Origin: Octopus sinensis
Lineage: Eukaryota
Direction: 5' to 3'
DNA: 22,041 nucleotides
Assembly: GCF_006345805.1 (NCBI RefSeq)
Contig: NW_021837012.1
Location: forward strand, 1-22,041
Within the stretch, counting starts at the first letter, position 1; every line of letters starts with the position of its first letter. Shown piece after piece: positions 1 to 11,201 of this stretch. The translations under genes and the position numbers were made by a program. The notes below the pieces were generated by a model that saw nothing but the letters and a program-made list of their open reading frames with translations, was not told where the DNA came from and did no database searches.

Positions 1-618
1 TGTCGCCAGTAGGGGTAGGAGCTTTCTAAACTTTGCTCAGGCTATTCGTATTCTAGTGGTGACACTCTCTGAGCATCCACCTTCACTACTAACTTGGTCA
101 CCCAGGTAGCGGAAACTATCAACTACTTCTAGTTTCTCCCCCTGGGGTGTGATGGAATCTGTTTTCTGAGTATTTGTGGTGTCTATTGTCCCTGTGCATC
201 TGCCGCACATGAAAGCTATCTTATCAATTAATTTCCCTTTGATGTTGCTGCACCTCTTATGCGTCCATAGCTTACACTGGGTGCATCTTATGGAGTTTCT
301 ACCTACACCTTTCCTACAGATCGAGCAGGGCCACCTGCCCGATGGGGTGTGTGCTGAGTTCGCCTTTCTGCTTACTATAACTTTGGTCTTTGCTACATTT
401 ACTCTAAGGCCCTTTGACTCTAACCCTTGTTTCCACACCCGAAATTTCTTTTCTAGTTCCGGTAGTGATTCTGCTATGAGAGCCAGGTCATCAGCATAGA
501 GGAGCTCCCAGGGGCAACCTGTTTTGAATTCCTCTGTTATTGCCTGGAGGACTATGATGAATAAAAGGGGACTGAGGGCTGAGATTTGGTGTACACCTAC
601 TTCTACCAGGAATTCTTC
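1..618 (-). pseudogene. RTE-like non-LTR retrotransposon ORF2 fragment: C-terminal half of reverse transcriptase with inserted PHD finger; premature stop; runs off the window edge
   Basis: Minus-strand translation EEFLVEVGVHQISALSPLLF...LLYADDLALIAES...GLRVNVAKTK...EKLEVVDSFRYLG. YADD is at 487-498. TGA at 37-39 falls inside RIA*AKFRKLLPLL (W expected). The N-terminal 42 aa of ORF 37..744 come from microsatellite and adjacent unrelated sequence. Confidence 0.9.
196..327 (-). other. PHD-type zinc finger (C4HC3) coding segment inside the RT
   Basis: CSIC-x10-CTQC-x4-HKRC-x14-CGRC, with W two residues before the H (WTH); 44 codons in frame with the RT. Confidence 0.8.
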
Positions 619-665
619 ATATATATATATATACATACATACATACATACATACATACATACATA
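619..665. repeat. (AT)n(ACAT)n microsatellite
   Basis: Directly visible. Confidence 0.95.
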
Positions 666-746
666 GGGACAACAAAATACAAAAAAAAATATGATGACCT
701 CGAAGACAGAATATTCCGGAATTGGTAACTTGATCTGTTAACACTT

Positions 747-1090
747 TTGAAGTGCTTTGAAGAGTGCCTTAGTAAAGTCAAGTCCTTCATTCGGAAGTAC
801 AACTCCGGAAACATACTAGTGATGGGTGATTTTAACCTCCCTTATGTGAACTGGCCCACAAATACTCTGAAGTTAGGCAAATGCTCTACATCAGATAGAG
901 CAGCAGCAGAACTGCTCTTTAATCTAATGGATGAATACTTCCTGACTCAGCTAGTGCTCGAACCAACGAGACAGAATAAAACGATCTTGGATCTGGTATT
1001 GACCAATCACTCTAGCTTCGTTCACAGTATTTCAGTTGAAAAAACTATCCTCTCAGACCTCGACATGATACTCTGCAATTTCAATTCCCG
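747..1090 (+). pseudogene. APE-type endonuclease fragment of the CR1-like LINE
   Basis: GDFNLP...EPTRQNKTILDLVLTN...LSDL (SDH motif mutated). Confidence 0.85.
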
Positions 1091-1666
1091 ACATATAAAA
1101 ACCAAACCAGCCAATACCACTCCATGGCACTCATTTGACAACATAAACTTCCACAAAGCGGACTGGGGAGCAACCAGAAAGGATCTGTCTTGCATCGACT
1201 TGTCTTTCACTCTCAATTCCACCCATACTGAGACCGCATGGCAGCACTTTGAAAACATTGTCACCTATACATGCGCTAAACACGCTCCCACGAAATCTAC
1301 TAACACAAACAGAAACCGGCTCCCTAAAAAGAAAAAAACACTCATCAGGCGCATCAAAAGACTCAACAAACAAAATCAACCAATTAAAATATTCCCACAT
1401 ACAACATCCAAATTCAACAACAATGAAAAGGCTAGAGCTGGAAAAACTTCATCTACAGAACGACATGAAAACCTCCATTGAAAATCAAAGAGCTGTGGAG
1501 GAACAGTGGGTAATCAAAAACATCAAACATAACCCAAAAGTGTTCTATTCTTATGCAAATAAGCATAGAACCACTGTCTCACCCATTGGGCCATTGATTG
1601 ATGATAACGGCATTCCCCAACACGATACTAAAGAAATGGTAGAAATACTGCAGAAATAATACTGCT

Positions 1667-3293
1667 TTGTCTGATATTGACGCAAGAGAAGCGAACGAAG
1701 TTGACCCTCAACATAAAATCTCAGACATAACCTTCACTGCCACTGACATCACAGCAGCAATAAATGAGATCAAATACTACTCTGCTGTAGGCCCTGATAG
1801 ATTCCCCGCTAGTCTCCTGAAGGAATGTAGACACCAACTTGCAGTCCCTCTGACCAACCTCTGGAGAAATTCGTTAGACGCAGGTTATATACCGAAACAG
1901 TTTCTATCCCAGTCAGTCATCCCGGTTTTCAAACAGGGAAACAGATCCCTCGCACTCAACTATCGCCCAATCTCACTCACCTCCCACATCATCAAAGTGT
2001 TTGAAAGAGTGTTAAGATCAAGGATAGCTGACTTCCTGGAGACCCACAAACTCCTAAATGCAAATCAGCATGGCTTTCGCTGAGGCAGGGACTGTCTAAC
2101 ACAGCTCTTACACCACATTGAAGATGTACTCAAAGCCTTGGGAACAGGTTCGAACTCTGATGTCATATATCTTGACTTCAGTAAAGCGTTCGACAGGGTA
2201 GACCATAATATCCTACTCTCAAAATTGGCAAATGTTGGAATCCGTGGAAAAGTTCTACACTGGATCAAGTATTTCCAGGCGAATATAACACATGTTGTAG
2301 TTGATGGAGTCCACTCAAGCCCAGCATAAGTCACCAGCGGTGTCCCCCAGGAGACTGTTTTGGGTCTGCTACTCTTCATAATTTACATAAACGACCTTTC
2401 CAGTGTCGTACATTACTGCAAAGTGAAAATATTTGCTGATGACACTAAGCTCCAGCAAATCGTCAATGAAGAAGCAGACCGAACTCAACTCCAGTCTGAT
2501 CTATATGCTGTGAGTCAATGGGCACACAGAGACAAAATGCAACTGAACAAGGGAAAATTTGAGCTGATGCATTTTGGAAGAAATTCCTCAATAAAAGGGG
2601 AACCGCTTACAGCCTCTAACAATATCAGACCTGGGTGTAATTGTTGATGACGATCTCAGTTGGAGTGCACACATCAACAAGAAGGTCGATATAGCTCGTA
2701 GGATGAGTTCCTGGATCTTAAGAACTTTCCGGTCCAGAGAACAAGGTGTCATCATACCACTTTTCTCCTCCTTTGTACGGCCACACCTCGAATACTGCTG
2801 CCCACTGTGGTCTCCTCACACAAGACAAAACATCTCCAGAATTGAGTCACCCCAGAGGGCACTCACTAAACGAATTGAAGGCATGGCTGCTGTCGATTAT
2901 TGGGATCGCCTTAAAGCCTTGAAACTTTACTCCCTCCAGCGTCGCCGTGAGCGGTACATCATTTGTACGATGTGGAAAATATACCGCCAACTAAGCCCAA
3001 ACGACCTGAACATTAGCTTCAAGGTTCATCCAAGACTTGGACCACGGGCTATACGTCCCCTGCCCAATTCAAGATCACAACATACATGTACACTGCAACA
3101 TAATTTCTTTTCCTCAACAGGCCCTGCCCTATTTAACATTGTCCCGAAAGAGATCAAAGAGCAACAGGATCCCATCAACTTTAAACGGAGTCTGGATAGA
3201 TTCCTTCAAGGAATACCAGATAAGCCACCCATAATTGGATACAACTCACCCAACAAAAACTCACTACTTGAATGGACCATAAACAAAGCTTGA
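1667..3293 (+). pseudogene. Reverse transcriptase and C-terminal region of the CR1-like LINE, broken into several frames
   Basis: ORF pieces 1667-2083, 2138-2329, 2360-2647 and 2703-3293 carry consecutive RT motifs. Confidence 0.9.
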
Positions 3294-9924: not shown

Positions 9925-9980
<56 letters not shown>

Positions 9981-10010
9981 TATACATATATATATATCTT
10001 TATGTGTATG

Positions 10011-10088
<78 letters not shown>

Positions 10089-10369
10089 TTATGTGTGTAT
10101 ATACATATATATATATATATATATATAATATATATATCTTATGTGTGTATATGTATATATATATATATATCTTTATGTGTGTATATGTATATATATCTTT
10201 ATGTGTGTATATATATATATATATCTTTATGTGTGTATATATATATATATATCTTTATGTGTATATATATATATATATTATATATATATATATATATATA
10301 TCTTTATGTGTGTATATATATATATATCTTTATGTGTGTATATATATATGTATATATATAATATCTTTA

Positions 10370-10412
<43 letters not shown>

Positions 10413-10424
10413 TTATGTGTATAT

Positions 10425-10459
<35 letters not shown>

Positions 10460-10515
10460 TATATCTTTATGTGTATATGTATATATATATATATATATAT
10501 CTTTATGTGTATATG

Positions 10516-10546
<31 letters not shown>

Positions 10547-10547
<1 letters not shown>

Positions 10548-10889
10548 ATAAAATATTATTAGAGACAAAACCACTATTTTGCAAACAAACAAGGAAATAC
10601 TTAATCAATACATAAATTTTAATAAATAGTCAAAAAAACTTCATAATTTGACACTGAATTATTGGAAGTCCACCTGAAGATTGTCGATCAAGACAAGAAA
10701 CGATTGTAGTGGCGGTTTTTTTGACTATTTATTAAATTTTATGTATTGATTAAGTATTTCCTTGTTTGTTTTGCAAATAGTGTTTTGTCTCTAATAATAT
10801 TTTATAATATTTTACTATAAAATTGGATTTAATCCTAAATCTGATTTTTTTCCCTGTAAATTTGGATTTATTCCCTAATATTTATTATT

Positions 10890-10890
<1 letters not shown>
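10547..10890 (+). mobile_element. Foldback element carrying a hammerhead ribozyme; probable non-autonomous Penelope-like/retrozyme-type insertion
   Basis: Inverted arms 10547-10639 and 10715-10806, a 75-nt loop containing the hammerhead, an AT-rich extension to ~10890, and (TA)n on both sides. Absent from the equivalent tract in macro-repeat copy 2. Confidence 0.85.
10670..10712 (+). ncRNA. Minimal type I hammerhead ribozyme
   Basis: CCAC CUGAAGA UUGUC-GAUCAA-GACAA GAAA C-GAUU-G UA GUGG: intact core, stem I 4 bp, stem II 5 bp, short stem III, predicted GUA cleavage after 10708. Confidence 0.8.
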
Positions 10891-10933
<43 letters not shown>

Positions 10934-10940
10934 TTATGTG

Positions 10941-10995
<55 letters not shown>

Positions 10996-11097
10996 TTATG
11001 TGTATATGTATATATTATATATATCTTTATCTTTATGTGTATATATATATATAATATATATATTGTATATGTATATATATATATATATCTTTATGTG

Positions 11098-11135
<38 letters not shown>

Positions 11136-11148
11136 TTATGTGTATATG

Positions 11149-11201
<53 letters not shown>

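What the first reader, a model, noticed from the sequence alone, without database searches (positions are those of the whole stretch)
10670..10712. Intact minimal type I hammerhead ribozyme in the loop of a ~260-bp foldback element
Seen: CCAC-CUGAAGA-UUGUC(GAUCAA)GACAA-GAAA-C(GAUU)G-UA-GUGG, with all core nucleotides and three helices, placed between 93-bp inverted arms. The stem III segment ACGAUUGU is fully self-complementary when two G-U wobbles are allowed. Established: minimal type I hammerheads with a palindromic stem III occur in the terminal repeats of Penelope-like elements and in retrozymes, and typically cleave as dimers. Inference: this is a self-cleaving RNA module of a mobile non-coding element, cutting after GUA at 10708. 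The U-A pair at 10.1-11.1 is less common than G-C.
Basis: partly seen in the sequence, partly recalled or inferred. Interest (0 to 1): 0.85.

Follow-up and report, generated by a model that had tools for sequence, protein, structure and literature searches.

The report
Hammerhead ribozyme motif in retroelement dimer
The 43-base hammerhead ribozyme motif is really there, but it belongs to a very abundant short retroelement of the Penelope-like type that inserts head-to-head into TA repeats, so the "foldback with a ribozyme in its loop" is a lopsided pair of copies: a new member of a known kind, not a new design.

Summary
The motif at 10670-10712 is confirmed. It has every hammerhead core base and three helices, and chance gives about 3e-4 such matches per window. 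It does not reach any Rfam hammerhead model, and it carries U-A where G10.1-C11.1 is normally conserved.

It is the consensus of a young repeat family in a 2.72-Gb animal genome. The exact 43-mer, allowing two mismatches, occurs 2,923 times and the arm about 5,159 times.

The "foldback" is not a designed hairpin. The family unit is about 175 nt, or 252 nt with an optional 3' tail. It runs 5' hairpin, hammerhead, T7, 3' body. Copies usually lie head-to-head, 5' ends inward, inside (TA)n. In the window the left copy is cut at the T7 run, so only one hammerhead remains. Only 20 loci genome-wide have such a junction.

Constant outer ends, variable inner ends, one tail per dimer (55 of 56), (TA)n targets and flank duplications match published Penelope-like element (PLE) insertion signatures.

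Catalysis is unproven. Seven independent truncated copies end exactly at the predicted cleavage product (G after GUA), which is suggestive, but a neighbour-count control was not clean.

Verdict: a PLE-type minimal hammerhead in a non-autonomous retroelement, of moderate interest.

The parts
9927..10546 (.). Left part of the (TA)n tract, interrupted by TCTTTATGTG, into which the element is inserted
   Evidence: Tandem Repeats Finder gives period 2 over 9927-10550. The same TCTTTATGTGTATATG interruptions lie on both sides of the element.
10547..10639 (-). Left, inverted copy of the family unit, covering unit positions 175 down to about 78. It is 5'-truncated at the T7/A7 run, so it lacks the hammerhead and the 5' hairpin. 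C10639 could belong to either copy.
   Evidence: BLAST of the reference unit gives window 10639-10532 = unit 78-184 at 93.6%. Inverted repeat. Junction AATAGTCAAAAAAAC|TTCATAATTTG.
10640..10669 (+). 5' end of the full-length right unit (unit positions 3-32), a predicted 11-bp hairpin directly upstream of hammerhead stem I
   Evidence: Many copies begin at the same (A)CTTCATAATTTG next to unrelated DNA. The pairing ACUUC/GAAGU and AUAAUU/AAUUAU was read from the sequence.
10670..10712 (+). Minimal type I hammerhead motif. Stem I is CCAC/GUGG. The core is CUGAAGA, GAAA and UA. Stem II is UUGUC/GACAA with loop GAUCAA. Stem III is AC/GU with loop GAUU. The predicted cut lies between A10708 and G10709.
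   Evidence: It is identical to the family's commonest 43-mer.
10713..10722 (+). CGG plus a T7 run, the commonest inner truncation point of partner copies
10723..10806 (+).
10807..10889 (+). One-sided 3' tail (unit positions 176-252, the long 3' end). It contains an imperfect 21-nt repeat.
   Evidence: Conserved in other copies. It is present on exactly one side in 55 of 56 dimers. The window aligns to unit position 252 at 10889. Repeat at 10818-10876.
10890..11196 (.). Right part of the (TA)n tract

Best explanation
The motif is a genuine minimal type I hammerhead of the kind carried by Penelope-like elements (PLEs). It sits 32 nt from the 5' end of a short, non-coding, non-autonomous retroelement of about 175 nt, or 252 nt with an optional 3' tail. 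The element is very abundant and recently active in this 2.72-Gb animal genome.

Shown: new copies lie in (TA)n tracts. Their outer (3') ends are constant and their inner (5') ends are variable. They usually form head-to-head inverted dimers that carry the tail on exactly one side.

Inferred: copies are made by target-primed reverse transcription by a PLE-type reverse transcriptase/GIY-YIG endonuclease. That enzyme nicks and extends both DNA strands and starts at two internal sites on the RNA. This would give inverted dimers and a one-sided tail. The window's 'foldback' would then be one full-length copy joined to a partner truncated at the T7 run.

Inferred: in the RNA the hammerhead cuts after GUA, between window positions 10708 and 10709. 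It most likely acts as a dimer through the near-palindromic ACGAUUGU, with help from protein, and inefficiently because 10.1-11.1 is U-A. Uncut RNA is the main template for new copies. Cut RNA gives rare dead-end copies that start at G72 of the unit.
For: Motif and chance.

Dimer fold.

Family size: 2,923 hammerhead 43-mers with at most 2 mismatches, including at least 100 exact copies on one scaffold, and 5,159 arm 38-mers. Median identity to the reference unit is 97%.

Architecture:
- Two loops lie head-to-head in most loop-bearing loci.
- The right copy has a fixed 5' end (A)CTTCATAATTTG next to unrelated DNA.
- The partner is variably truncated, and solo half-units exist.
- 55 of 56 dimers have exactly one tail.
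- (TA)n lies on both sides.
- One locus has a 155-bp direct target duplication at 100% identity, and another has a 97-nt inverted duplication of its flank.
- One 1.3-kb palindrome is a chimera of this unit with the genome's canonical hammerhead family, which points to template switching on a shared enzyme.

The Rfam-positive canonical min-hammerhead family in the same genome has the same design and also forms inverted dimers at (TA)n. Its design is a 4-bp stem I, N7 = A, a 5-bp stem II, and C15.2-G16.2 with a 4-nt loop.

Literature:
- PMC4209133: minimal hammerheads in PLEs, pairs on opposite strands 100-700 bp apart, most as single truncated copies, dimer activity.
- PMC8557442: an inverted 5'-truncated copy, a one-sided tail, and (TA)n bias.
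- PMC11167929: a purified PLE protein cuts and extends both strands, starts reverse transcription at two internal sites about 90 nt downstream of the hammerhead cut with the tail between them, prefers AT-rich DNA, and has a protein-assisted hammerhead that is not needed for insertion.

Here the short 3' end lies 104 nt downstream of the predicted cut.

Cleavage in vivo: 51 loci are arms-only palindromes. About 15 of them have an inner end between unit positions 64 and 78. In 7 of those, all independent with different junction partners, the end falls exactly at G72. The binomial probability is 2e-5 for one pre-specified position and 2e-3 if positions 71 and 72 are pooled.
Against: - No Rfam hammerhead model matches, even with the search space cut to 59 nt.
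- A covariance model built from this genome's canonical hammerheads ranks the site first in the window, but at only 13.4 bits and E about 0.04.
- U10.1-A11.1 replaces the G-C pair that PMC4209133 calls highly conserved. The extra base between positions 9 and 10.1 that is typical of PLE min-hammerheads is absent.
- In the full palindromic form, an RNA would pair the hammerhead with its own antisense. In the window's hairpin, the predicted minimum-energy fold does not form stem I.
- The neighbour-count control for ends at the cut site was not clean. Ends at unit position 72 number 24 (3 of them point mutants), at 71 number 16, and at 73 number 30 (1 point mutant). In the 20 window-type junctions the main pile-up is at 78-80, not 72.
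- No autonomous PLE sharing this 3' end was identified, because I could no longer read genome sequence.
- Conservation within the family says nothing either way.
Confidence: 0.6

Rival explanations
1. The motif descends from a Penelope-like element (PLE) hammerhead but no longer cuts. The U-A pair at 10.1-11.1 has disabled it. The fold survives only as a structured part of the template RNA (for example for protein binding), or simply hitch-hikes on a successful element.
For: U10.1-A11.1 and the lack of any Rfam match. PLE hammerheads cleave poorly even as dimers (PMC4209133). They are dispensable for insertion in vitro, and no reads end at the cut site in vivo (PMC11167929). The main pile-up of truncated ends, at 78-80 just 3' of the motif, fits a reverse transcriptase stalling at a folded domain as well as it fits cleavage.
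Against: All eleven core bases and all three helices are intact in the family consensus, which has thousands of near-identical copies. Seven independent copies end exactly at G72, beyond the 3' strand of stem I, where a structural stall is not expected. The only subfamily change inside the motif, G65A, turns two G-U pairs of the dimer helix into A-U.
Confidence: 0.25
2. It is a metazoan non-LTR retrozyme. Tandem genomic copies are transcribed, each hammerhead cuts, and the unit-length RNA is ligated into a small circular RNA that is the transposition intermediate.
For: It has a type I hammerhead, low GC (26%) and a unit size within 170-400 nt (PMC7229834). A few tandem arrays exist, for example two copies 360 bp apart at C18:31889340-31889963, and same-strand hammerheads 512 bp apart.
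Against: Tandem arrays are the exception: one close same-strand pair against 18 close inverted pairs among 100 exact hammerheads. Copies have defined linear 5' and 3' ends that do not coincide with the cut site. There are no circularly permuted copies among 116 aligned copies.
Confidence: 0.08
3. The whole palindrome plus tail is the mobile unit, whether a DNA foldback/MITE-like element or one long hairpin RNA. The hammerhead-like string is a chance match, and the variable centres are later deletions of an unstable palindrome.
For: A fixed structure with one tail would be inherited automatically. Identical junctions recur in a few loci. About 36 chance matches to the loose descriptor are expected per genome. 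There are weak Rfam hits to MITE-derived miRNA precursor families.
Against: Solo half-units start exactly at unit positions 1-2 next to unrelated DNA and lack the tail. Target-derived DNA lies between the two halves in L052 and L055. There is a chimera with another hammerhead family. No terminal inverted repeats bound the element, since the tail lies outside the arms. The chance that a given 252-nt consensus carries the motif is about 3e-6. The MIR8562 score is 32 bits against a gathering score of 211.
Confidence: 0.07

Closest known systems
Minimal hammerheads of Penelope-like elements (PLEs) (Cervera and de la Pena 2014, PMC4209133)
   Same: Type I topology, a 4-bp stem I, a 1-2-bp helix III with a small palindromic loop, and predicted action as a dimer. 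Thousands of dispersed, mostly solitary or truncated copies, and pairs on opposite strands about 100 bp apart.
   Different: U10.1-A11.1 replaces the highly conserved G-C pair. There is no extra base between positions 9 and 10.1. Stem II is 5 bp rather than 6-8. The cut-site triplet is GUA. The copies are nearly invariant rather than highly variable.
Poseidon PLE of the green anole, PAc (Frangieh et al. 2024, PMC11167929)
   Same: The order is hammerhead, then about 100 nt, then two alternative starting points of reverse transcription with an optional tail between them. The target is AT-rich. Both DNA strands are nicked and extended, which would give inverted copies.
   Different: This unit has no open reading frame and is only 175-252 nt. 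Its tail is 77 nt rather than 30-40. The relation to any PLE protein is inferred, not shown.
Naiad and other endonuclease-bearing PLE insertions (Craig et al. 2021, PMC8557442)
   Same: An inverted 5'-truncated copy abuts the 5' end, the tail is one-sided, and there is a strong bias for (TA)n microsatellites. Naiads are reported in Octopus species.
   Different: Naiads lack canonical hammerheads and are 3.4-4.4 kb coding elements.
Metazoan non-LTR retrozymes (PMC7229834; 10.64898/2026.07.22.740005)
   Same: A short, AT-rich, non-coding element with a type I hammerhead, regarded as a non-autonomous derivative of PLE terminal repeats. Solitary monomers are known.
   Different: Retrozymes are defined by head-to-tail tandem repeats and circular RNA. 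Here tandems are rare and inverted dimers are the rule.
Canonical min-hammerhead family of the same genome (Rfam RF00163 hits, L031-L040, L071-L075)
   Same: The same helix lengths, N7 = A and GAAAC, with a 4-nt loop III. It forms inverted dimers at (TA)n and is found fused to this unit in L034.
   Different: Outside the core the sequences are unrelated. That family has G10.1-C11.1 and reaches 30-48 bits on Rfam.

Membership tests
Hammerhead ribozyme, type I | Conserved core C3 U4 G5 A6 N7 G8 A9, G12 A13 A14, A15.1-U16.1, H17 | tested here: met
   All are present at 10674-10680, 10697-10700 and 10707-10708. The descriptor hits here and gives 0 hits in 2,000 shuffles.
Hammerhead ribozyme, type I | Three helices around the core, with helix I open | tested here: met
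   Stem I has 4 bp, stem II 5 bp and stem III 2 bp. Stems I and II appear in the minimum-energy fold of the 43-mer. The full hammerhead fold lies 1.1 kcal/mol above it.
Hammerhead ribozyme, type I | G10.1-C11.1 base pair | tested here: not met
   The pair is U10681-A10696. PMC4209133 states that the G-C pair is highly conserved.
Hammerhead ribozyme, type I | Match to a curated covariance model (Rfam RF00163 and the other hammerhead families) | tested here: not met
   There is no hit at the gathering score, none at E<=10 on 341 nt, and none on 59 nt. My own model from this genome's canonical hammerheads gives 13.4 bits, E about 0.04, as the top hit in the window.
Hammerhead ribozyme, type I | Site-specific self-cleavage | not testable with these tools
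   The only evidence is indirect. Seven independent truncated copies end at the predicted G1.1, and the neighbour counts are ambiguous.
Penelope-like element (PLE) minimal hammerhead | Short helix III with a palindromic 15.2-16.2 and loop 3 that allows a double hammerhead | tested here: met
   ACGAUUGU is self-complementary with two G-U pairs. The dimer cofold gives -23.4 kcal/mol against -15.0 for two monomers. The G65A subfamily makes the palindrome perfect.
PLE minimal hammerhead | Unpaired base between positions 9 and 10.1 | tested here: not met
   A9 is followed directly by the first pair of stem II.
Non-autonomous element mobilised by a PLE | Inverted 5'-truncated copy at the 5' end, with constant 3' ends | tested here: met
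   There are 56 head-to-head dimers in the loci held. Outer ends are constant and inner ends vary.
Non-autonomous element mobilised by a PLE | Optional tail at one end only | tested here: met
   55 of 56 dimers have exactly one tail and none has two. The tail is 77 nt, longer than the published 30-40.
Non-autonomous element mobilised by a PLE | AT-rich or (TA)n target | tested here: met
Non-autonomous element mobilised by a PLE | Sequence shared with the terminal repeat of an autonomous PLE (reverse transcriptase plus GIY-YIG) in the same genome | not tested
Open reading frames in the held flanks gave only LINE-type domains.
Metazoan non-LTR retrozyme | Head-to-tail tandem repeats of 150-450 bp, each with a hammerhead | tested here: not met
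   The window holds a single sense hammerhead. Among 100 exact hammerheads there is one close same-strand pair against 18 close inverted pairs.
Metazoan non-LTR retrozyme | Expression as a unit-length circular RNA | not testable with these tools
   No transcript data were available.
MITE or foldback DNA transposon | Terminal inverted repeats at both ends, flanked by a fixed target duplication, with the element moving as a whole | tested here: not met
   The tail lies outside the right arm. Solo half-units exist. Duplications of 155 bp, and inverted ones, occur.
MIR8562 or MIR169_2 microRNA precursor | Rfam gathering score | tested here: not met
   The scores are 32 bits against 211, and 18 bits against 50. 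These hits merely reflect a long AT-rich hairpin.

The most novel reading that the evidence does not exclude
The genome keeps a fossil record of hammerhead self-cleavage in vivo. Copies whose 5' end falls exactly at G1.1 of the predicted cut would be run-off cDNAs made on cleaved RNA. That would show that a Penelope-like element (PLE) type minimal hammerhead with U10.1-A11.1 is active in the animal. It would also make the long-open question of what PLE hammerheads do testable by counting junctions. The rule of exactly one tail per inverted dimer (55 of 56) would likewise be a genomic read-out of a dimeric PLE enzyme that starts reverse transcription at its two internal sites on the two DNA strands.
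Probability: 0.25. Interest if true: 0.6.

Novelty: new member of a known kind. Interest (0 to 1): 0.35.

Why it matters
Minimal hammerheads linked to Penelope-like elements (PLEs) are known in many animals, but their role is still unclear. They cleave poorly in vitro, insertion does not need them, and no cleaved RNA has been seen in vivo.

This family is large, young and uniform. Its ends are sharply defined, which makes it a convenient natural data set in three ways:
- Junction statistics over thousands of copies could show whether cleaved RNA is ever used as a template.
- The same statistics could show how inverted dimers and one-sided tails arise.
- An activity test would show whether a hammerhead tolerates U-A at 10.1-11.1.

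For annotation, the practical lesson is that such "foldbacks" in TA-rich microsatellites are retroelement dimers. They are not MITEs and not microRNA precursors.

Tried and rejected
- Rfam at gathering and at permissive thresholds found no hammerhead. The only hits were weak ones to microRNA precursor families, caused by the AT-rich hairpin.
The hammerhead shows 0.54% mismatches against 1.06% elsewhere, p = 0.10. There is no power, because the copies are young.
- A flip-flop inversion of the loop was my first idea when the loop appeared in both orientations relative to the tail. I dropped it once the full form with two inverted loops was seen. Either loop can be the one that is lost.
- Exact-pattern scans of metagenome and viral contig collections found nothing.
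- Pfam scans of open reading frames in the window and in flanks of other copies gave only LINE-type reverse transcriptase/endonuclease fragments or nothing. No Penelope-like element (PLE) gene turned up.
- Counts of junctions at unit positions 71, 72 and 73, with point-mutant controls, did not give a clean spike. The counts were 16, 24 and 30. They are confounded by a probable 1-nt deletion variant (seen in L048) and by TA-repeat flanks that mimic the element's own TA.
- A Pol III reading (A/B boxes) was considered and rejected, because the T7 run lies between the candidate boxes.
- The organism was not identified by a tool. The assembly figures remind me of an octopus assembly, but that rests on memory only, and a paper search did not settle it.
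From then on I used only pattern counts and the matched strings that the search itself prints.

Full report
**1. The observation**

They read CCAC, CUGAAGA, UUGUC, loop GAUCAA, GACAA, GAAA, C, loop GAUU, G, UA, GUGG.

I wrote a descriptor requiring a 4-bp stem I, CUGANGA, a stem II of at least 4 bp, GAAA, A15.1-U16.1 plus at least one further pair, and UH.
- It finds exactly this site in the window and none in 2,000 dinucleotide shuffles.
- From base composition the expectation is 3e-4 per window, and about 36 chance matches in the whole genome.
- In 226.6 kb of real sequence from the same genome it hits only this family (79 times) and the genome's canonical hammerheads.

The inverted arms 10547-10639 and 10715-10806 are real. 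ACGAUUGU is self-complementary with two G-U pairs. Two copies cofold into an 8-bp intermolecular helix III at -23.4 kcal/mol, against -7.5 for each monomer.

Against the motif:
- No Rfam hammerhead family matches at the gathering score, at E<=10 on 341 nt, or on 59 nt.
- A covariance model that I built from this genome's canonical hammerheads puts the site first in the window, but at only 13.4 bits.
- The 10.1-11.1 pair is U-A.

**2. What surrounds it**

The window comes from a 2.72-Gb assembly of 13,516 contigs with about 30 chromosome-sized scaffolds. It is an animal genome. Its figures remind me of an octopus assembly, but I did not verify that.

The 260-bp stretch has many copies at 87-97% identity. 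Pattern counts over the whole genome give 5,159 copies of a 38-nt piece of the arm with at most one mismatch. They give 2,923 copies of the 43-nt hammerhead with at most two mismatches, at least 100 of them exact on one scaffold.

Aligning 30 copies showed three things:
- The element continues about 80 nt past the right arm, in a conserved tail.
- (TA)n flanks both sides.
- The loop occurs in either orientation relative to the tail.

A search with the loop alone explained the last point. Most loop-bearing loci have two loops head-to-head, forming a palindrome of about 335 bp with a hammerhead on each strand, plus one tail.

**3. The unit**

I took the right half of a full palindrome as the reference (252 nt). 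Its layout is:
- positions 1-32: a 5' hairpin;
- positions 33-75: the hammerhead, with the cut between 71 and 72;
- positions 72-78: GTGGCGG;
- positions 79-85: T7;
- positions 86-175: the 3' body;
- positions 176-252: the tail.

BLAST against the 75 loci held gave 116 independent copies with a median identity of 97%.
- Outer ends are constant, at about 175 or at 252.
- Inner ends vary.
- The full-length copy starts at the same (A)CTTCATAATTTG whatever lies upstream: unrelated DNA, a partner cut at 58, 112 or 140, or a spacer.
- Solo half-units exist (L042, L045, L046, L070).
- Of 56 head-to-head dimers, 55 carry the tail on exactly one side and none on both.

In the window the right copy is full length with its tail (10640-10889). 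The left copy is cut at the T7 run (10547-10639). Only 20 loci in the genome have a junction of that type. The single hammerhead "in the loop" is therefore an accident of truncation, not the family's design. The insertion lies in a 1.27-kb (TA)n tract that carries the same interruptions on both sides.

**4. What kind of element**

Four features argue for reverse transcription from the 3' end with strand or template switching, not DNA transposition:
- constant 3' ends with variable 5' ends;
- solo units;
- target DNA between or beside the halves, namely a 155-bp direct duplication at 100% identity in L052, microsatellite filler in L055, and a 97-nt inverted duplication of the flank in L045;
- a 1.3-kb palindrome (L034) whose halves are 99.8% identical, in which this unit, from position 24 on, is fused to the genome's canonical hammerhead family.

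The published signatures of Penelope-like elements (PLEs) fit point by point.
- PMC8557442 reports an inverted 5'-truncated copy at the 5' end, a tail at one end only, and (TA)n bias. It also reports Naiad PLEs in Octopus.
- PMC11167929 reports a purified PLE protein that nicks and extends both strands, starts reverse transcription at two internal RNA sites roughly 90 nt downstream of the hammerhead cut with the tail between them, and prefers AT-rich DNA.
- PMC4209133 reports minimal hammerheads in PLE terminal repeats, mostly as solitary truncated copies and sometimes as pairs on opposite strands 100-700 bp apart.

Here the short 3' end lies 104 nt downstream of the predicted cut.

The Rfam-positive canonical family of this genome has the same helix plan and also forms inverted dimers next to (TA)n. 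I could not find the autonomous partner. The tool stopped releasing genome sequence, and the open reading frames in the held flanks are LINE-type or empty.

**5. Does it cut?**

Conservation cannot tell. The copies are young, and the mismatch rate in the hammerhead (0.54%) does not differ significantly from the rest (1.06%, p = 0.10). The one subfamily change inside the motif, G65A, makes the helix III palindrome perfect.

I looked instead for copies made on cleaved RNA, which should begin at G72. There are 51 arms-only palindromes. About 15 of them have an inner end between positions 64 and 78. Those ends fall as follows:
- 7 independent loci (8 ends) stop exactly at ...CCGCCAC, which is G72. 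Each has a different continuation (A, AA, AAAAC, T, TA, TGAC, or the mirror GTGGCGG).
- 3 loci are at position 76, all with the same CCGCGG junction.
- 2 loci are at 64-65, 2 at 78 and 1 at 73.

The binomial tail is 2e-5 for one pre-specified position, and 2e-3 if positions 71 and 72 are pooled. An end at 72 lies beyond the 3' strand of stem I. A run-off on cut RNA would stop there, but a stall at a helix would not.

Other results weaken this.
- Among the 20 window-type junctions, 11 are at 78-80, 3 at 72 (explicable by a 2-nt microhomology), 4 at 51 and 3 elsewhere.
- The genome-wide counts of ...CCGCCAC followed by a non-matching base (24, of which 3 are point mutants) are no higher than those one base to either side (16 and 30, the latter with 1 point mutant).
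- Those counts are confounded by a probable 1-nt deletion variant (L048) and by TA flanks that imitate the element's own TA.

I rate in vivo cleavage as suggested, not shown.

**6. Comparison and verdict**

It works like, and most probably is, a PLE-type minimal hammerhead in a short non-autonomous derivative. Recent work groups such elements with animal retrozymes (PMC7229834; 10.64898/2026.07.22.740005).

It fails three tests: the Rfam model test, the G10.1-C11.1 feature, and the tandem-repeat definition of retrozymes. I therefore file it as a new member of the PLE min-hammerhead kind with an unusual core-adjacent pair, not as a retrozyme proper.

Interest is moderate. The kind is known. What may be worth a specialist's time is the family's size and uniformity, the one-tail-per-dimer rule, and the possible fossil record of cleavage.

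Noticed in passing
L034:636-1907: This is a 1.3-kb near-perfect palindrome whose halves are 99.8% identical over 430 nt. Each half is a chimera. One part is a stretch of the genome's canonical-hammerhead family with its own hammerhead, followed by 37 nt of unknown origin. The rest is this unit from position 24 to its 3' end. The tail is on one side only.
   Followed up: partly
L052:1097-1869: The two inverted units are separated by 155 bp of non-element DNA. The same 155 bp is repeated at 100% identity just beyond the right unit and its (TA)n. No simple staggered-nick model that I tried reproduces this layout.
   Followed up: partly
L045:1204-1500: A solo unit is preceded by an inverted duplicate (97 nt, 99%) of its own left flank, with (TA)n between the two flank copies.
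   Followed up: partly
G000 scaffold C1, list: Among 100 exact hammerheads there are eight minus/plus pairs with 5' ends facing each other, 0.7-12 kb apart. There are no plus/minus pairs within 15 kb (sign test 0.008). These may be large palindromes like L034, or they may enclose longer, perhaps coding, elements.
   Followed up: no
L031-L040, L071-L075: A second hammerhead family that matches Rfam (GUAC CUGAAGAG ACCC..GGGU CGAAAC AUGU GUY GUAC, up to 48 bits) sits in a unit of at least 450 nt. It also forms head-to-head dimers next to (TA)n (L071) and tandem copies 431 bp apart (L036/L037).
   Followed up: partly
held loci, 56 dimers: The tail is present on exactly one side in 55 of 56 inverted dimers and on neither side of the solo units seen. 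Independent choice between two start sites would also give dimers with two tails or none.
   Followed up: partly
window 37-2083: These are fragments of a LINE-type retrotransposon on both strands. They carry reverse transcriptase with a PHD finger at 37-744 (minus strand), an Exo_endo_phos_2 endonuclease at 747-1481, and reverse transcriptase at 1667-2083. They are unrelated to the finding.
   Followed up: partly
G000 C19:52661578 and 52661888; C1:3736004-3736828; C18:31889340-31889963: Local tandem arrays of whole dimers occur at spacings of about 310-400 bp, including arrays of arms-only hairpins without any hammerhead. The family therefore also seeds small satellites.
   Followed up: no
window 10818-10876: The tail contains an imperfect 21-nt repeat of three copies (consensus TAAATTTGGATTTATTCCCT, 68% matches).
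   Followed up: no
L048:1640-1680: A variant lacks G72, the first base after the predicted cut (GATTGTA-TGGCGG). It may account for 22 genome-wide matches of CCGCCA followed by T. If it is an inherited subfamily, it would shift or weaken stem I.
   Followed up: no
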